Shown in pieces: positions 1,172 through 41,591 of a DNA stretch of 64,000 nucleotides; within the stretch, counting starts at the first letter, position 1, and each line of letters opens with the position of its first letter. Origin of the DNA: Dimorphilus gyrociliatus (Eukaryota; Animalia; Annelida). The notes under the pieces are model-generated. The model saw nothing but the letters and a program-made list of their open reading frames with translations, searched no databases and was not told where the DNA came from. The stretch is from contig CAJFCJ010000001.1 in the NCBI GenBank assembly GCA_904063045.1, positions 1,550,001-1,614,000 of the forward strand, written 5' to 3'. Both the position numbers and the translations under genes were made by a program.

Positions 1172-2561
1172 TTAATCAACATTTAACTTTCTGAACATTG
1201 TTACTGGCTCATCTTTCGTGTCTTTCTTTTTACTTTTATCAACTCCTATACTGCCGTTGGAAAGTTCTTGGAAGTATTTTATCCATTTTGGTGACTGCAT
1301 TTCCTTCTTATAGTTCTCTGTAATTGAATATTAATTCATATCTTAAGTCTTATCAATAAGGTTAACTGCAATTAATATAGATGAATCTTTGATTATTTAC
1401 CTGCTAACTCTGCGCAAGTTCCAGCTGTTGGTCCGTCATAGTCATCGGGTAGAAATTCGCTAGGAAGATATTTTTTATCAATGGCCCCGTATACAGATTC
1501 CAACGTTTCGTGAATAAAGAATCTTTCCAAGTACTTTTTCTTAAGGATAGGTTTGGCAAGGGCGAAGAAGAATTCTATTACTGCACCGGAATTGTACAGG
1601 TGGAAACCTTTCAATCTACCCGGTAATCTATCTTGAGCCATTTTATTCCATGTTTTAGCTTTATCCCCTCCGACTAGACTCATTTGCTTTAAAGTTACTT
1701 TGGTGTAATCAAAAAAGAGAATAAATCCATTAACTTGAACTTTCTCATCCATTGTAGCGTATTCATGGTTCATTAACCAATATTTCAGCATATCATCTAC
1801 GGATAATAGTTTACCTTCCCCAACATCTTCCAGACGTAGTTTACCTAATTAATTAATGCAAATTTATTGTTATTTGTTCAGAATACCGTTTACTTATTCT
1901 TTATGATTTTCATTAGAGTTTTAAAGTCAGGTGAATGAATATGAATTTAATTATTTTCTACTTCTTATCAATGGAAGGGATTAGCTAAAATTTTTAAGAA
2001 TTACCTATCCACTTTATGAATGATTGTAGATAAGATAAATGGCGTAAATTAGTTTTTGTCATGATACAGTATTTATTACCTAGTTGTGACCTATATCTAG
2101 ATCAAAACTATTGATTTCTAATAAAGGGGTAGCTGGAGTTTTACAGGTATATAAACAAATAGCTTACTTATACTGTAAAAGAGGACTTTTCTACCCATTT
2201 TATCATAGCCTGGTAAGGGGAAGCCGTATCCAATTGATAATAGATGATCAATAGCCTTTGAACAAGGGTCCATATTTGTAAACCATTGAGGATATTCCAT
2301 GAAATTTGAGCAATAGCCCTCCAGAATTTCTCTTGCCCTTAGTTGACTAAATTTAGCTCCTCTTAGGAATTTCAATAAGAAACGAAAATGTTTAAACGTT
2401 TTCAAATGGTCTTGTTTATCAACCCATTCCTTTAACGCTTCAACAGCTCCCTCTCTATCTGAGAATATTTCGTGCAACTCCTCCTTAGCCTTTTTAACAG
2501 TCATATTATCATTCTCAAAACTGCATTTATAATCTTTAAAACTGCATTTGTAATCTTCCAT
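1172..2561 (-). CDS. CRAL-TRIO (alpha-tocopherol transfer protein/clavesin-like) lipid-binding protein, paralog 1; exons 2561-2168, 1844-1401, 1317-1172
   Basis: FLLKFLRGAKF (CRAL-N), GxPLPGYDxxGRKV, VQVNGFILFFD, GRLKGFHLYN, LPSEFLP. Splicing the two GT-AG introns restores co-linearity with paralog 2, including the shared C-terminus FRKLNVD*. Confidence 0.9.
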
Positions 2562-3073
2562 ATTTATCGGTTATTCTACTGCACATAACAAATGGAAATA
2601 ATCAATAAAGAGCACACGTATCACATAAATAAATATTTACTAGCTTTTTTACCTGACCAGGTTCACACGATAAATGAAAAGACCTATTACCGCCAGTAGA
2701 AACTTGAAAAGCCTCATCAGAATAAGAACTAGGCCTATTACATCTAAGTGCCGGATGTAATAGACCGAAATATGTTTTACCTATCATAAATTTGGTAATA
2801 TTTAAATTAAGCCTTTTCCTTATCAACAGGCCTATGTACTCTGATAGTCTTTGCTATTATGCTACATGTATTTAATATTATTTTACATTATTAAGAAGTG
2901 CTTGTTTGATAATGAAAAAAAAAACAATAGGCCTAAGATGACAATAATCGTAATAGTGAATAATAATGTACATATGAAAATCATAGGGACGGACAAGACA
3001 AGCAACAAGCAAATAAGAAAAAGAGTTTTATTCTTATATTTTTCTATAGTAACATCTTTAAAAGTAAATAGTT

Positions 3074-4033
3074 CTAATCAACATTTAACTTTCTAAATAA
3101 TGCGGTAGGTGCATCGCCGTTATTCTTCTTTTTATTATCAACATGAAACGAAGAATTGAATCTACTATCGTAATATTTTCTCCATTCTTCAGATTGTATT
3201 TCTTTCTTAAATTTGGCAGCCATTTCGCTAAATGTACCCTGAGTTGGACCATCGTAGTCGTCGGGTAGATATTCCGATGGTAAATTCTTTTTATCGATAT
3301 TTTTGTAGACTTCTTCTAGAGTTTCGTAAACGTAAATTCTATTTAGAAATTTCTTCTTCATAAAAGGTTTAATGAAGTTGAACATGACTTCGAATAGGGC
3401 TCCAATGTTATACATTTGAAAAGCCTTTAGCCTACCAGTCAATCTATCTTCAGTGGCAGTATTCCATTCCTTTATCTTATCCCTACCTATCATGCCAAGT
3501 TGTTTCATGGTTACATTAGTGTAATCGAAGAATAGGCTAAATCCATGAATTTGAGTTCTTTCCTCCGAATTAGCATAGGCTCCCAAAATTACCCAAACTT
3601 TCATTAGATCATCCACATCAATTGTTTTACCTTTTCCAATTTCATTATAGGGTATGGAGCTTATCTTGTAGAAGATAACCTTTCTTCCATCCACATCATA
3701 ACCTGGTAGTGGAATTCCATAACCCTTCGAAAGTATCCAATCAGTCTTCTTAGAACATGGGTCTAAATCCCTAAACCAGCAGGGGTATTCATCAAAATTT
3801 TTAACATAACCTTCTAGAGTTTCTCTTGCCTTCTTTTGGCTAAACTTTGCATGTCGCAAAAACGCTAAAAGCATTCTAGTATCGGCTTTGAATACAAGAT
3901 GCTCCTGACTATTTAACCATTGCCTCAGACAGTCGACAGCGGCAAGCCTATCAGACGGTATTTCGTATACCTCCTTTTTCGCCTTTTCCAATGTAAAAGG
4001 ATCATTTTCAAAACTGCAAGTGTATTGTTCCAT
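3074..4033 (-). CDS. CRAL-TRIO (alpha-TTP/clavesin-like) protein, paralog 2; coding region intronless, 319 aa
   Basis: Complete ORF with MLLAFLRHAKFS, QIHGFSLFFD, GRLKAFQMYN, LPSEYLPDDYDG; clear tandem paralog of 1172-2561. Confidence 0.92.
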   Translation of the reverse strand: MEQYTCSFENDPFTLEKAKKEVYEIPSDRLAAVDCLRQWLNSQEHLVFKADTRMLLAFLRHAKFSQKKARETLEGYVKNFDEYPCWFRDLDPCSKKTDWILSKGYGIPLPGYDVDGRKVIFYKISSIPYNEIGKGKTIDVDDLMKVWVILGAYANSEERTQIHGFSLFFDYTNVTMKQLGMIGRDKIKEWNTATEDRLTGRLKAFQMYNIGALFEVMFNFIKPFMKKKFLNRIYVYETLEEVYKNIDKKNLPSEYLPDDYDGPTQGTFSEMAAKFKKEIQSEEWRKYYDSRFNSSFHVDNKKKNNGDAPTALFRKLNVD

Positions 4034-34632: not shown

Positions 34633-36581
34633 AGAATAACTGCTTCTCAAACTGTAAACAAATGTTAGGAATTGTTAATATTAACTGTACAAAAAAATAA
34701 AAAGAAAGAAAAGAAGATATTGGTGCCATTTTTAGAATGAAATTTGATTTTTTTTTTAACTCTCTTATTTCAATCTGTACAGAAATATATACAAATAAAC
34801 AATATACAGATATATACAATATATATGCATATATCAAATTTATATATTCAGATAATAGATCTATTTGAAGTATATATTTCTTAATAAATATTCGATAATA
34901 TAATTATTTAAAAAAAAAAAGAACAATAATAATCAATAACCAATTAGAAAAATGCCTGATCATATCTACTTAAAATGAATCTATAAATAAATAATACTTT
35001 GGATAGAAAAAAATTCAATCAACTTCATTTTATTCAATATCCACTAGCTTGTCCATTTATCTTAGAGTAAATTTTTCCTTTTTTAGACATTTTCAAAATG
35101 ATTAAATGAACTGAAAAACAACAAAATGTTTTTAAAGTTAAGATCCGGTCACTTTGAAGCCAAAAGGAATTTCCATTAACTCTATATAACATTCATGGTA
35201 TTTGGATGAAGTATAATGAAAAATAAAGTGACTCTTTTGTTATTTCTAGTTTCAATACATTGTAATTTATTTAACAAGTCTACTTTCTTGATTTAAAATA
35301 CAAAGAGAATAAAAAGTTTGCCGATAACTGATAAGAAATGATAGAAGAAACAGGCATAACAAGAAAATTTTCTCTATATTATGATAATCGTAGTCCAGTT
35401 GCCAATCTGACAAATCTAATCGAGATTTTGGAAGTAAGTTATTCTATCTTGTTCCATTGAATAATGTAAAAATTCTACCGGTAAATAAATATATACAACT
35501 TCAGTTCGTGAAGAATTTATCACCATATTTATTAAGGAATTATATGGTTGCCTGTTGCAGAATGTACGATATACCTTATTTACATATCCCCCTAATAGAA
35601 ATGACTCGGGAAAATTGATAATATACAAACAGAACGTAAACTGATCCAGTTAGGTGCCTTTTGTCAGTCTAGTCACTCACCAAGTTTTTATTTGACTTTT
35701 ATTGATTACTTTTTTTCCTCAGTCATATTTTCTACTTGATTTTTCTTTTATTAAAGTCTTCCGTAGGCAGGATTCTGTTTATTATATTTCCACTTGTTCT
35801 TGACCAAAGGGAAGAGTCTTTTCATTCCTTTGAAAAACGAATACTTCCGTATCCTTTGATTAGTTCTCTCGCAAATTCCAATTAACAAACTGAAAGATGA
35901 GGCTAGAAGAAGAAACAGGAATTTCCTGTAAATTTCATACAAAGACTATTAAAGTAGAATTGAAAAGAAGTATCATTTAATCTTTTTAGAATACTTGTAT
36001 CTCTAATTCCAATAGATGGCACACTATGTAAACACCAAGAAAAGTACTATTCTCCTTTTCTAATCAAATCCTATAATTTGGCTTTCAAACTAACCGAATT
36101 GGATAAAGGAGGCTATCTTGTTTCACGCAAATCTTATCGATTATCGAATTTCAAATGATTAAGTATTTATTCTTCTGTTAAGCGACTAATTATGGTTGTA
36201 ATTTTAAGCTACTCTATTTTCGATTATAAAACCCTACTTATTCTGATTAGATCAATTTATTTCCAATTCAATTATTGTATTAACACAAATAGACAAGAAA
36301 ATAGTAAAAGATTCTTTTTACCCAGGTATCCATTTTGAATACAACAAAAAAAAGTTTAAAAATGTTCTAGAACATTTTTTTTATAAAGTGAAAAAATTCA
36401 TCATTTTTAATTAAATTATTAATCTTGATAATAAATAATATTTTATTATAAATCAAAGTAATAATTAAATTATAATGTTTTTTATAAAGTTAAGAAAATT
36501 GTTTTATACGAATATAAATGTGTTCTGTTGAGTTGTTTCATCGAGTCAGATAGCGGAAATATTAATTGTCACCTTATAGCC

Positions 36582-37962
36582 ATGCTTTTTAAAAATTTTA
36601 TCATTTCTTGTTTACTTTGCTGCTCTTTTCAAGAAGACGAATTCTTTAAAAAAGTACCAAGAAATATCGCTGTTACTCCCGAAACTAGTCACTTTAATTT
36701 TGACTGTGAAGTTGTTGGCGAAGACGAAAAAGGAGTCGCAACAAGACAAGATGTTTTCATTATGTCTAAAAGTAAAATTATAAAAGAGTATCAAGCTTTT
36801 TATGAAGCGAATGGTACTAGTGTAATTTATACGAAGCCGGCTGAACAATATGTAAATGATACGTATCACGACTGTATTGTTTTTCCATTTTCCAGAAGGG
36901 CAAGAGCTGTATTTTCTGTTCTCTGTACGTATTAACAATGATATATTTATAATATACTAAATGATATGATGGTTAATTTCAGCTAAGTTTACTTGTAATA
37001 TACCTGAAAAAGTACGAGAGGGGGAAATTATGACTGTTGACATGACAATTAAGTTTACTCATTTTTCGCCTACTTCCAAATGTAATCTTGGATTAGCATC
37101 TAGTACTAAATTAGACTATGATAATATTAATAATCAGGAGGAAAAACTTCAAGGGAAAGCATCGTTTAATCACACCGCTTCAGTGGTAAAATCAATGAAC
37201 GGTCAAACATTGAAATGTGAAATTTTTTATGATGAAAGTCAGGATTCTTTAACCGAAGAATTAGACCATTTAAGAAATATACAGGAAAAAATTGATTCCA
37301 ATAAACATTCCATTGATACAAAACAACCCAAGTTACTTGGGGCTAGTTTCCAATGCGAGAGAAAAGTTGAGCTTGAATGTGAGTAGTATCACGCTATTGA
37401 AAATTAAAACAAAAAATTTAGTCAATTATATCTTAAATTTCTATGTTCTTATTCATAGATGGAGCTCAGAATATAACAATTTCTATAGACGGAATTATTG
37501 CTTTGTGTGAATATGATTCATATCCTAAATCATCAAATATTACGTGGAGTATAAAACAGGATGAAAATGTAAAATTACAACTGATAATTTTAATTTATTT
37601 ATCCAATTAACTAACATCCTTATTATTAAATTTCAGAATACAGAAAAATTATCAACAACAACAAATGTACTGGATATCGAAAAATATCAAAATAAATACG
37701 TACAAATTTCTTGCGATGTACGTGTGGACTTTTACGATGGATCATTTTCTATAAAATCCAGCGAGTATAGTGAAAGAACCTATGTTGGTAAGTTGTTGTA
37801 ATTATACGATTTAGATAGAGATTAACTTATATATTTACAATATAAACTGATATTAAATTGAGTCTACTTTTAATTGCAGTTAGAGATGGATCAACTTCTA
37901 GTTTTTTGAAGGCAAACTTAACAGCAATCTGGATTTTAAGCATTTTAATTTACAATTTGTAA
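36582..37962 (+). CDS. Three-Ig-domain cell-surface protein with a C-terminal GPI-anchor-type signal (IgA), 360 aa; exons 36582-36924, 36983-37378, 37459-37568, 37637-37787, 37880-37962
   Basis: Signal peptide; Ig-like Cys pairs (FDCEV/DTYHDC, SKCNL/GQTLKC, ALCEYDSYP/ISCDV); C-terminus DGSTSS-FLKAN-LTAIWILSILIYNL* with no cytoplasmic tail. Exon sum is 1083 nt, in frame. Confidence 0.8.
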
Positions 37963-38790
37963 ATTTGTAAATTTTAGACTAAAATATGTTTTTAACAGTC
38001 TACAATAGTCCTCTAAAATATAAGAATAGTAGTACACTATAAACTCGATAACAGCTACATTTCCTTTATTTAAGTCTTTTAAACGCTACTATTATACTAT
38101 ATACTCTATTCCACTTGTATCCAACTCAACAAACACCCTGTTTAAAACACTGTCTTTTTGAAAACTTATAATTATGACAAATGAAATTAAAAACTATAGC
38201 GACCGGATTAAAATCTTAAGTGTTTTTAATCCCTTCTCCACACTAATAGATTTCTTAACAGTAGTAATATTTATCCTCTCAAGGTTTGCAACAAAGTTAG
38301 TTCAGCATAAACTTAAAAACTGTTTAAAAATTCAAGTTTTTATTAAATTAGGTGAAAAATATAACAAAAAATTCAACTTTTGGACAGAAATTGTATAAAA
38401 GCATATAAAAAGACTTAAACAATGGTTGATGATAATTATATAGAGCTGGATTTGCATAGTGTTTTTGATCCCTAAAAACAAGAATGATGAGAGTATACTA
38501 CAGTTTTAACATAAAAATGAAATATAAAATGAAATTGAATTTCGAAAAAGATTAACGAATCCGAAAATGTTGAATAATACAAGAACCGATTTTTTACTAA
38601 ATTAAATAATACATTGCGACAATCCTAATGGAGGAATAAATCTTCTGCTTTACCGCATAAAACATAGAAAAACAAGTGTGTTTACAAGCAAATTAGCGAC
38701 CATGAGGAACAAGCTATGCTGGATAATATATCGGAATCAAGTATTGATAAGATAAACACAAGGTTACAAAATATTCACAATACTATGCTA

Positions 38791-41164
38791 TTATGCTAAC
38801 GAATAAGGTATTTTATATGGAGGCGGTGGAGTCGTTTTATCAACATTCGAATAGATAACGCTAGCACCACTCGCAGCTTCTTCAAAACCGTAAAATTGTG
38901 GTCTTATTTCGCTGTAAATGGACGATGCTATACCGTCATTCCCAGAGGATAAGTTTACATTATCCAGAGGGTATAAGGGTTTCCGGCTATTGGCTTTTGT
39001 GTCCACAATGACAGCAGAGCCATCTTCATCGGCGCAGACTACTCTATCCGACTGTAGCAAAGACAAAAAATATTTTATTTATATAAAATTCTGAACACTT
39101 TTCTGATTGCATTCATCATAGTTAGAATGATACAAAAATTCTTCTTCCTCCTCATAAACCTGTTAGATAACCATTTATCAATAATTTATCTTGGAAAATT
39201 TTAAAAACTTTCATCTAGAGGCGCATGCTTTTTTTTTTCCTCTCTTTTTTTTGTTATAAAAAATTTGCACTCCTATTCGATTAAAATAAGCAGTCGGATT
39301 AGGAGCTCTTTTTTTTTATTTAAAACATTTTGCGTAGGTTTAATATATAAAAATGACTTACATCATTGGTAATTGCTTTTTGAGGTTTCAGGTCTCGAGC
39401 AACTTTCTCCGATCTGTAGTAATAAGTACAAACATTTAATTTAACAACCTTCCTGTTTGTTAACCACAAACCCAATATCTTTTGCCATCTCTTTATTTTT
39501 TTCTTTTTCCTTTCTTCGGCATATTATCACAGTGATTACAACAAGAATAACAAGAATAGCCATTGTCACTCCAACAGCTATCCCAATTTGACTGCTTGCG
39601 CTAAGTCCACTGCTAGACTTGTCAGTGTTTTCTGAAATAAAGTGTTTAACTTGTTAATCACATCAAAAAAATGTATAAAGCTCTTTGTTAAGTTTTATAA
39701 TGAACTGTGTTACAAGCTGTCTTTAAGATAGAAGCCACACAAGCTACAACTAAATCTGCCGATGCTACCTAAGATAGCAGTTGACAACATGGTACTGGAC
39801 TCCATAGATTCTCCTATCGTGGTCCTTTCAACTGAAATTTCAATTATCTTATACTACGATTGCATTTCAATACAAAAAATTTCATTCTTAACTATTGTGT
39901 AGCTTAAGAATATGCATAGGCCTAAATATGATAATTTAGTAAACTTACCAAGTCGAATTTTTTCACTAAAAGAGCTACTCTTTTCTTTGGTTGTTCCATC
40001 ATAAAACATAACTGATACTGTACATGAGATAGTGATAGGGCTTTCAAGGTATGCTTCAAACTTCAACTCCCTCGATTGCAGTTTTTTAACAATTTGACTC
40101 TAATTTCATTCAATTTAAAAAATATTTTTATACTATAAGAAAGTGAATAATTTATTAATATCTTAATATCTTACTCCGTTGGTATATCTGATGATAAAGG
40201 TTATATTGACGATGTTAGGATTGGAGTCATATTTACATATAGCTCTGTCTTCGTCAATCTCTACTTTCACAGAATCATCCAAATCTGAAATTAAAAGTGG
40301 GCGTTAAGATATAATTTTTTAACATTATACTTAATGGATTATATTAAAGATTAACTTACACTCAACATTTAAATTCTTTTTACAGATGAATTTGCTAAAA
40401 GTTAGTTTTGGCTGTTTTTCGTCAATATATAAATTACGACCTGCAGTAGGTATAAGTTTGAAGTGATTTGATTCAATGGGTAAAATATTCTCATCTGGTT
40501 TATAATCAAATCTACATCTTAATTCTCTGCCTTGCATTGACCTATGCGCAATATTTGTAAGTTCATTAGTAACGAGACCACGTAATTTTACGTTGGGCGA
40601 GTTGAGATTTTCGTAAAATGGATCTGTTGTTGCACTATCAAGTTTCAAGCCTACATCACATATAATAGTTGGCGAGAAATGGGTAAAATGTATGGACAGT
40701 TTCAAGCCAACTGATTCCCCTTCTTTTACTGCTTCCTTAGCATCACATTTAAAATCCGCTGTTAGTTTAAAAAAAGACCTCTTGTTAAAAATGATTATCT
40801 TATTTATTATCTAAGTTATTGTTAACTTACATAAGGTAGCGAAGGCTGCTCTGTAGCTTTCTTCCTTGAAAGATTCTACACACTCAAAATAGGTATCGTC
40901 TTCGTATTCATCTGCTTTTTTTGTGTAAAAAGTTTCATCTCCAACGTTTCTGTAGTGTTCTGTGTACTCAGGCCCAATTTCATTTAACCAGAAAATTTTT
41001 TTTGATTCGTTTGTTTTTATCGCTTTATGTTTAACAGAGCAATTGAAGCTAAAATTCGAAATTTCTGGTGTCACAACGATATTCCTGGGCTTTACTATAT
41101 CCTGTGTCTGACTTGAGATAAAATAAGTTGAGAGTAACATAAAGATGAAGTGGGAGTTGATCAT
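38791..41164 (-). CDS. Three-Ig-domain type I transmembrane receptor with a Tyr-motif tail (IgB), about 509 aa; exons 41164-40831, 40758-40360, 40284-40175, 40099-39949, 39831-39769, 39631-39472, 39413-39362, 39051-38791
   Basis: Paralog of IgA (PRNIxVTPE, THFSP, KQPKL, CxYDSxP, SCxVxVxFYDG). TM IGIAVGVTMAILVILVVITVIIC followed by RRK. Tail contains SIYSEI, VIYSNV and PPPPY. Exon sum is 1530 nt, in frame. Confidence 0.82.
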
Positions 41165-41591
41165 ATTTGCCACATATATCCGCTTTTTCTCATATGACTA
41201 AATTTTGTTACACCTTTCCCGTAACGGCCATTTTATAAAGTTTTCATGCATCAGCACCATCTAGTGTGAAATTAGCTACCCCACGGCCCTTTATAGATGG
41301 CGTTTTTTTAGTTATATCACTGTAGTTATTCAAGTGAATGTCTGACTAATCTTACTAAAGCCATCACGGAAAAATCATGACAGATAGTGACTGTGTCATT
41401 TATATAAAAAATAAATAAAATATACATAAAATATACAAAAAGTTTAAAGCAAAAATAAAAACAAACAAATACCTACGCCGTTGCGTGGGTTTGAAAATGT
41501 TAACTCGAAAACTTATTGTCTAAACTTATCACGTTTTGACACTGATAGCGATGGTAATTAACTCAATAATATTGTTTTTCAGAGTATCACT

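What the first reader, a model, noticed from the sequence alone, without database searches (positions are those of the whole stretch)
36582..41164. Paired Ig-receptor locus: GPI-type paralog facing an ITIM-bearing transmembrane paralog
Seen: two convergent genes share a 3-Ig ectodomain with identical intron phases (1,1,0,1) and identical exon 3 and exon 4 lengths (110 and 151 nt), yet are very divergent in sequence. IgA ends in a GPI-type hydrophobic signal with no tail; IgB has a TM and a Tyr-rich tail. Known: pairs combining an ITIM-bearing TM receptor with GPI/decoy relatives occur in vertebrate CEACAMs, and ITIM-bearing Ig-like receptors function in Hydractinia allorecognition. Inference: this may be an undescribed invertebrate inhibitory-receptor/decoy (or ligand-receptor) module for self/non-self recognition or cell adhesion. 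Neither full gene is visible in the ORF track.
Basis: partly seen in the sequence, partly recalled or inferred. Interest (0 to 1): 0.82.

Follow-up and report, generated by a model that had tools for sequence, protein, structure and literature searches.

The report
Worm-specific Ig receptor and anchored sister
A tiny marine worm has two facing genes for related antibody-like surface proteins, one probably lipid-anchored and one with a conserved signalling tail; they belong to an undescribed seven-gene family, but the sequence evidence argues against one being a decoy for the other.

Summary
In Dimorphilus gyrociliatus, two convergent, expressed genes (DgyrCDS412, DgyrCDS413) share a three-domain Ig unit with the same intron phases and 35% identity. 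RNA contigs confirm the splicing and add a cassette exon in IgB's stalk. The predicted fold is nectin/SynCAM-like (V, long C2, C2). The pair belongs to a family of 7 genes and 14 units at 5 loci. Relatives were found only in unnamed related worms, where orthologs are one-to-one. IgB is the only member with a long tail. Against a second species its ectodomain is the family's fastest-changing (34%), while its last tail exon is 76% identical. Only one ITIM is shared by three species. The second is better read as a YxN site, the PY motif is lost, and the relatives have an ITAM-like pair instead, so 'inhibitory' is unproven. The decoy reading fails its key test: A and B first domains are 38% identical with no gene conversion. 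Best reading: a lineage-specific cell-recognition family with one tyrosine-signalling receptor; IgA is a GPI-type partner or co-receptor. The scan noted other GPI-Ig repeat families in this genome; one note (s1-081005) may cover a paralog locus.

The parts
36582..36924 (+). IgA exon 1: signal peptide and V-type Ig domain D1 (Cys42, Cys98; no core Trp)
   Evidence: AF2 pLDDT 87.8; Z 11.4, rmsd 1.9 over 88 aa to DIP-alpha D1
36983..37378 (+). IgA exon 2: long C2-type domain D2 with the family motif FTHFSP and four Cys in non-canonical places
37459..37568 (+). IgA exon 3 (110 nt): first half of D3
37637..37787 (+). IgA exon 4 (151 nt): second half of D3
37880..37962 (+). IgA exon 5: GPI-type C-terminal signal (small residues, polar spacer, 14 hydrophobic residues, stop); missing from the GenBank model
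   Evidence: joint; hydropathy and species-2 counterpart; no GPI predictor available
37963..38790 (.). Shared 3' interval; the two 3' UTRs overlap or abut
   Evidence: one RNA unitig runs unbroken 37879-39051; X1 IgB contig ends at 38445; a contig across two genes shows no single transcript
38791..39051 (-). IgB last exon: conserved tyrosine tail; first 30 residues identical in three species
38905..38922 (-). ITIM-consensus site SIYSEI (SVYSEI in two relatives): the only ITIM shared by three species
38842..38859 (-). VIYSNV: ITIM consensus here only; relatives keep VIY.N (YxN, Grb2-type by known SH2 consensus)
38806..38817 (-). YKIP (YRIP in relatives): conserved YxxP site; the overlapping PPPY is not conserved
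39079..39159 (-). Conserved candidate alternative exon in the last intron: 26 codons and a stop, would give a short tail with none of the last-exon motifs; not seen spliced
   Evidence: 66/81 nt identical in species 2 with acceptor, frame and stop kept, against about 60% in most other introns; no joint
39362..39413 (-). IgB 52-nt cytoplasmic exon
39472..39631 (-). IgB TM exon (helix about 39519-39587) and basic stop-transfer stretch
   Evidence: TM 70% identical in species 2
39769..39831 (-). IgB cassette exon (63 nt, Ser/Thr-rich stalk), included or skipped
   Evidence: joints 39831/39949, 39631/39769 and 39631/39949; a 75-nt counterpart in species 2, present in the transcript of species 3
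39949..40099 (-). IgB exon 4 (151 nt): second half of D3
40175..40284 (-). IgB exon 3 (110 nt): first half of D3
40360..40758 (-). IgB exon 2: D2; 9 SNPs in the second allele; 31% identical to species 2
40831..41164 (-). IgB exon 1: signal peptide and D1; 6 coding SNPs in the second allele; D1 37% identical to species 2
41202..41269 (-). Conserved non-coding element just upstream of IgB (promoter or 5' UTR)
   Evidence: 84% identical over 68 nt to the matching place in species 2

Best explanation
IgA and IgB are sister paralogs from an old inverted tandem duplication within a small worm-lineage family of cell-surface recognition proteins built from a V / long-C2 / C2 Ig unit (nectin/SynCAM-like architecture). 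Most members are GPI-type or short-tailed and cannot signal alone; IgB is the family's one signal-transducing receptor. Shown: gene structure, expression, family size, motif conservation. Predicted: Ig fold, GPI anchor. Inferred mechanism: the N-terminal V domains bind family members on neighbouring cells, as in nectins, DIPs and Kirrels. Engagement clusters IgB, a tyrosine kinase phosphorylates its tail, and SH2 proteins dock: a SHP2-type phosphatase at S[IV]YSEI, Grb2 at YxN, a Crk/Nck-type adaptor at YxxP. IgA acts as a trans ligand or cis co-receptor rather than as a mimic. Splicing tunes stalk length and possibly removes the signalling tail.
For: Splicing in RNA. AF2 ectodomain pLDDT 86.8; best whole-length matches MAG, nectin-1/3, Necl-4/5, CD22, SYG-2; D1 matches adhesive N-terminal domains of DIP, RIG-5, JAM-A, Necl; Atlas rows are CADM, Kirrel, Fas3. 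Exactly 14 units at 5 loci with shared intron phases. The tail is single-copy in the genome. All 14 first domains have a one-to-one counterpart in related worms, as expected of a stable recognition code. Tail 76% and 91% identical across species, against 34% and about 55% for the ectodomain. Two SH2-SH2-PTP loci exist in the genome. The pair and its orientation are kept in species 2, though inverted as a block against the flanking genes.
Against: No binding, localisation or phosphorylation data. IgB's ectodomain is the least conserved of the family (D1 37%, D2 31%; others 46-83% and 34-63%) and more polymorphic than IgA (16 of 907 vs 2 of about 930 nt, p = 6e-4), which is odd for a stable developmental code and fits outside pressure. 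Fold matches to adhesion molecules are tied with antibody V domains within about 1 Z and show no function. Conserved adjacency may only reflect the duplication.
Confidence: 0.5

Rival explanations
1. IgB is an immune-type inhibitory receptor whose ectodomain is driven by microbes or parasites; IgA is either its decoy or an unrelated bystander.
For: Fast ectodomain with conserved tail; raised polymorphism in IgB exons 1-2; one conserved ITIM; opposite orientation as in CEACAM pairs (PMC5112662); a precedent in a lophotrochozoan, oyster CgNCAM1 with two ITIMs and SHIP2 (PMC11841013).
Against: No A-B homogenisation (38% in D1; longest shared run 10-11 nt), so the decoy part fails. pN/pS about 0.4 within species and dN/dS 0.34 in D1 between the two relatives. 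No gene birth and death. Relatives carry an ITAM-like pair.
Confidence: 0.2
2. IgB, with or without IgA, serves species or kin recognition, for example in gametes or mating contact, so its ectodomain diverges between species and varies within them.
For: Fastest ectodomain in the family; elevated allele divergence confined to the ectodomain (0 of 450 coding nt in TM and tail, p = 0.002); architecture loosely like Hydractinia Alr (bioRxiv 2022.03.04.482883); an Atlas row is a tunicate histocompatibility ligand (0.91, a lead only).
Against: One allele only, 1.8% different and mostly conservative; sampled species-2 contigs are 100% identical to each other, though they were picked by exact match. 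The worm is solitary and has no known allorecognition (own knowledge). No sex- or tissue-resolved expression.
Confidence: 0.12
3. The family is a heavily eroded offshoot of a conserved CAM (Kirrel/nephrin N-terminal three domains, Fasciclin 3, or a Wirin) and does that family's usual job.
For: V plus CD80-like C2 start as in Kirrel, nephrin and Fas3; three Ig plus GPI as in DIP/IgLON; an origin from some such ancestor is likely.
Against: No sequence link: 0 PDB hits at E<=10 for D1, only 27 hits among 1.84 billion proteins, all family members; domain counts and C-terminal PDZ motif do not match (PMC10084454); canonical C2-set_2 domains exist elsewhere in this genome (7 matches).
Confidence: 0.1
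4. A and B are functionally unlinked; they are neighbours only because of the duplication.
For: Divergence is near saturation; different anchors; separate promoters at the outer ends.
Against: Kept together through a block inversion; both expressed in the same two runs; 3' ends overlap or abut.
Confidence: 0.08

Closest known systems
Nectins and Necl/SynCAM (CADM)
   Same: Three-domain V-C-C ectodomain; best whole-length structural matches (nectin-3 and Necl-4 Z 9.9; CADM1/3 TM about 0.57); single TM in IgB.
   Different: No sequence similarity; D2 has a long insertion and four unusual Cys; no C-terminal PDZ or band 4.1 motif; nectins are chordate-only (PMC10084454); the unit is repeated up to four times in paralogs.
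Wirins (DIP, Dpr, IgLON, RIG-5)
   Same: Three Ig plus GPI for IgA; D1 fold closest to DIP-alpha, DIP-eta, RIG-5 (Z 11.2-11.4); a small family with stable orthologs.
   Different: No sequence hit to solved Wirins; D2 is a long C2-type domain; one member has a tyrosine tail.
CEACAM1 with GPI-anchored CEACAMs and paired decoys
   Same: One TM member with ITIM among GPI-type relatives with repeated units; opposite orientation; fast ectodomain; possibly a short-tail splice form.
   Different: No gene conversion or high similarity between the pair; no expansion or turnover between species; unrelated sequence; D1 keeps its Cys pair.
Hydractinia Alr family
   Same: Ig domains missed by Pfam but clear by predicted fold; tyrosine motifs in tails; SHP homologs in the genome.
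   Different: Alr D1 lacks the Cys pair, the layout is V-I-I-Fn3, 41 genes lie in one complex and alleles are extreme; here 7 genes at 5 loci and modest polymorphism.
Oyster CgNCAM1 (PMC11841013)
   Same: A lophotrochozoan IgSF receptor with two ITIMs and SH2-phosphatase signalling, so ITIM receptors are already known in this clade.
   Different: It is an NCAM homolog (3 Ig plus FN3); no relation in sequence; no GPI sister gene described.

Membership tests
Immunoglobulin superfamily | Ig beta-sandwich fold in each domain | tested here: met
   AF2 pLDDT 86.8 and 87.8; Foldseek E 7e-10 to MAG Ig1-3; D1 Z 11.4. D3 alone also matches Fn3/C2-type sandwiches (Z about 9). D2 was not folded alone.
Immunoglobulin superfamily | B-F Cys pair and core Trp | tested here: inconclusive
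   By sequence: Cys pair present in D1 (13 of 14 units) and D3; Trp absent in D1 and D2, present in D3 of IgA and paralogs but not IgB; D2 Cys are non-canonical. Bonds not measured on the model.
Immunoglobulin superfamily | Match to a Pfam Ig model above cut-off | tested here: not met
   Best: V-set E 0.015 in 1 of 26 D1 sequences; nothing over cut-off.
Nectin / Necl (CADM) | Three-Ig ectodomain plus TM | tested here: met
   (IgB)
Nectin / Necl (CADM) | C-terminal PDZ-binding motif, band 4.1 motif; sequence homology | tested here: not met
   Tail ends YSLA here and IPYC in relatives; no sequence hits.
Kirrel / nephrin | Five Ig domains (or nine plus FN3) and C-terminal PDZ motif (PMC10084454) | tested here: not met
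   Three domains; C-terminus not conserved.
Wirin (DIP/IgLON) | Three Ig domains plus GPI anchor | tested here: inconclusive
   Architecture fits IgA; GPI inferred from hydropathy only.
Wirin (DIP/IgLON) | Sequence homology to Wirins | tested here: not met
   D1 profile: 0 PDB sequences at E<=10 although DIP structures are in the PDB.
Paired inhibitory receptor / decoy (CEACAM type) | Highly similar ligand-binding domains kept by gene conversion (PMC5112662) | tested here: not met
   D1 38% identical; longest shared nucleotide run 10 (this species) and 11 (species 2); synonymous sites near saturation.
Paired inhibitory receptor / decoy (CEACAM type) | Opposite transcriptional orientation | tested here: met
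   Convergent in both species.
Paired inhibitory receptor / decoy (CEACAM type) | Diversifying selection on the inhibitory receptor's binding face | tested here: inconclusive
   Ectodomain fastest in family but pN/pS about 0.4 and D1 dN/dS 0.34; too few sequences for site models.
ITIM-bearing inhibitory receptor | Conserved [SIVL]xYxx[IVL] in the tail | tested here: met
   S[IV]YSEI in three species; each species has two hexamers but only this one is shared.
ITIM-bearing inhibitory receptor | SHP/SHIP effector present in the genome | tested here: met
   SH2-SH2-PTP arrangements at C9:2359307-2361723 and C4:1793607-1795674; SHIP not sought.
ITIM-bearing inhibitory receptor | Phosphorylation, phosphatase recruitment and inhibition of an activating signal | not testable with these tools
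   Needs biochemistry; ITAM-like spacing in two relatives leaves the sign open.
Hydractinia Alr | V-I-I-Fn3 layout, D1 without Cys pair, single gene complex | tested here: not met
   against bioRxiv 2022.03.04.482883.
Hydractinia Alr | Extreme allelic polymorphism | tested here: inconclusive
   One further allele, 1.8% different in the IgB ectodomain.
GPI-anchored protein (IgA) | Signal peptide, small omega residues, spacer, terminal hydrophobic stretch, no tail | tested here: met
   By inspection and hydropathy (max 11-residue KD 2.6; no charge in last 15); same pattern at 15% identity in species 2 and in three paralogs.
GPI-anchored protein (IgA) | Predictor call or PI-PLC release | not testable with these tools
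   No GPI predictor among the tools.

The most novel reading that the evidence does not exclude
An annelid lineage independently built a CEACAM-like system from a nectin-like Ig unit: one fast-evolving, polymorphic receptor with a tyrosine-motif tail and a short-tail splice form, reading GPI-anchored relatives or foreign ligands for immune or kin recognition.
Probability: 0.15. Interest if true: 0.75.

Novelty: new variant of a known kind. Interest (0 to 1): 0.45.

Why it matters
Surface-recognition families of annelids are almost undescribed, and this one is invisible to Pfam. It is small and closed (7 genes, 14 units), has exactly one signalling member, and sits in a culturable worm with a compact genome, so an all-against-all binding map and a tail-signalling test are feasible. 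The contrast between IgB's fast ectodomain and its nearly frozen tail marks it as a real receptor under some outside pressure. The design itself (IgSF receptor with tyrosine motifs plus GPI relatives) is known from several animal groups, which limits the surprise.

Tried and rejected
Pfam on exons, on P0001 and on 26 D1 sequences: no hit over cut-off; RENR_N and others are noise. PDB sequence search with D1 and D2 profiles: nothing. Word searches found only the worm's own proteins and unnamed Logan relatives. The big protein search was used once because these left the protein open and the claim rests on absence: 27 hits, all family; clusters at 50% hide members (P0029 was not listed). D1 and D2 profiles are not related to each other. 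Rejected: IgA splicing on to a TM exon (RNA shows exon 5 and stop); decoy by mimicry; a conserved PY motif; a conserved PDZ motif; P0029 as an allele of species 2 (synonymous sites near saturation and a clearly diverged 3' UTR, so more likely a third species); an internal A-B recombination explaining the swapped positions in species 2 (A matches A2 in all domains and the IgB upstream element travels with B2, so the block was inverted whole). A 72-row fragment alignment (A4) was misaligned and not used. The related species could not be named (no paper cites the run). Left out: the joined splice models were built only inside scripts and never sent to a search tool; searches went exon by exon by reference or with database proteins P0001, P0003, P0029, so the full IgA (with exon 5) and the long IgB form were not searched as such.
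Full report
Organism and gene models. The genome has 77.9 Mb in 349 contigs, and the two proteins are on record as DgyrCDS412 and DgyrCDS413 of Dimorphilus gyrociliatus. I rebuilt both models from the window. IgA has five exons and 360 aa. IgB has seven or eight exons and 488 or 509 aa. Contigs of two RNA-type runs show all IgA introns and all IgB introns but one; that one follows from contig lengths and from two database proteins. RNA adds a 63-nt Ser/Thr-rich cassette exon in IgB's stalk. The GenBank models lack IgA's last exon and IgB's signal peptide, which hides the anchor difference.

Fold. Pfam and PDB sequence searches are blank. AlphaFold on the IgB ectodomain gives three beta-sandwich domains (pLDDT 86.8). 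The best whole-length matches are MAG Ig1-3, nectins, Necl-4/5, CD22 and SYG-2, with high rmsd from domain hinges. IgA D1 alone (pLDDT 87.8) matches the N-terminal V-type domains of DIP-alpha, RIG-5, JAM-A and Necl-2 (Z 10.8-11.4, rmsd about 2 over 88 of 92 residues); antibody V domains lie within about 1 Z, so this shows the set type and not the function. The Atlas agrees (CADM, Kirrel, Fas3). D1 keeps the Cys pair but lacks the core Trp; D2 is long, carries a family motif FTHFSP and has four unusually placed Cys.

The family. Searches of the genome, closed with profiles, give exactly 14 units at 5 loci: the pair on C1; two genes on C14 (1 and 4 units); C2 (3 units); C9 (2 units); C4 (2 units). 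All units have the same four-exon layout. IgA, C14b, C2 and C9 end in GPI-type signals. C4 has a TM with a tail of about 12 residues. C14a has no anchor exon that I could find. IgB alone has a long tail, and that tail is single-copy. Among 1.84 billion representatives the profile finds 27 proteins, all from this worm or unnamed Logan assemblies of related animals. The family is thus restricted, as far as HMMER can see. I found no paper describing it.

Comparison with relatives. A second species (run SRR23372228) has the same convergent pair, inverted as a block against the tetraspanin and TP53RK-like neighbours. Every first domain has a one-to-one counterpart, so the family is stable, not turning over. 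Neighbouring genes are 60-97% identical. Family D1s are 46-83% identical and D2s 34-63%, but IgB is lowest in both (37% and 31%). In contrast its TM is 70% and its last exon 76% identical. A spliced transcript from a probable third species (P0029) repeats the pattern: 49-60% in the Ig domains, 91% in the last exon against species 2. A second D. gyrociliatus allele from a coral metatranscriptome differs at 16 of 907 coding nt in the IgB ectodomain (10 replacement, 6 silent; pN/pS about 0.4), at 2 of about 930 in IgA and at none of 450 in TM and tail (p = 6e-4 and 0.002). This is one consensus contig per gene and is only a hint.

The tail. Two ITIM-consensus hexamers are present; chance gives two in 3% of shuffles. 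Across three species only S[IV]YSEI is shared. The second site keeps VIY.N, which by known SH2 consensus suits Grb2. A YxxP site near the end is kept; the PY motif and the C-terminus are not. Both relatives have a Tyr where this worm has Asn, giving them LDYVNL, a second ITIM that with YSEI also forms an ITAM-like pair. The tail is therefore a constrained phosphotyrosine scaffold whose sign is unknown. The genome has two SH2-SH2-PTP loci. The most conserved part, the first 30 residues of the last exon, is identical in three species and unexplained. A conserved in-frame exon in the last intron (39159-39079) would give a short tail without these motifs, but no run showed it spliced.

The decoy idea. 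Paired receptors and decoys must stay alike in the ligand-binding domain and do so by gene conversion (PMC5112662). A and B are 38% identical in D1, their silent sites are near saturation, and they share no run longer than 10-11 nt in either species. IgA is not a mimic of IgB. A ligand or co-receptor role remains open and untested.

Mechanism and rivals. Most likely (0.5) the family is a cell-contact recognition set, with IgB turning engagement into SH2 signalling and IgA as GPI-type partner. A microbe-driven inhibitory receptor (0.2) or species/kin recognition (0.12) would explain IgB's fast, polymorphic ectodomain better, but neither has direct support, and ITIM-bearing Ig receptors are already known in a lophotrochozoan (oyster, PMC11841013) and in Hydractinia (bioRxiv 2022.03.04.482883). 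An eroded ortholog of a known CAM (0.1) fails on domain count, tail motifs and sequence (PMC10084454).

Verdict. Real, expressed and conserved; an undescribed lineage-restricted Ig family of a known general design. Interest 0.45. Joined splice models were kept inside scripts and not searched; searches were exon by exon or with database proteins.

Noticed in passing
window 36573 to 35925, minus strand: A spliced antisense transcript (donor at 36572, acceptor at 35926, both with good consensus) whose 5' exon overlaps the IgA start codon; inferred from a loose contig end; longest frame across the joint is 68 aa.
   Followed up: partly
window 37963-38790: The 3' UTRs of IgA and IgB overlap or abut; one RNA unitig runs through; poly(A)-type signals at 38635 (+) and 38339 (-).
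   Followed up: partly
window 38962-39051: First 30 residues of the last IgB exon are identical in three species, and silent divergence in this exon is low (pS 0.51 and 0.29 against 0.6-0.9 in the Ig exons), hinting at an RNA-level or binding constraint. Unexplained.
   Followed up: partly
L044 / L049 (species 2): The IgA-IgB block is inverted relative to the tetraspanin and TP53RK-like neighbours; the sequence beyond A2 does not match this window.
   Followed up: yes
G000:C14:1641606-1642910 (L032:606-1910): Single-unit paralog whose D1 lacks both Cys in both species and which has no obvious anchor exon; possibly secreted.
   Followed up: partly
G000:C14:1637616-1640870: Two neighbouring single-exon genes upstream of the C14 Ig cluster, similar to each other in their C-terminal halves, with signal-peptide-like starts; not identified.
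   Followed up: no
G000:C9:2359307-2361723 and G000:C4:1793607-1795674: Two SH2-SH2-PTP (SHP2/corkscrew-type) loci.
   Followed up: partly
P0026 (Logan ERR14224706): A D2 exon of the IgA/IgB clade from yet another sample, about 35-40% identical to the others; no DNA was served.
   Followed up: no
window 2118-4033: Two tandem CRAL-TRIO-like genes on the minus strand (judged from the ORF translations only).
   Followed up: no
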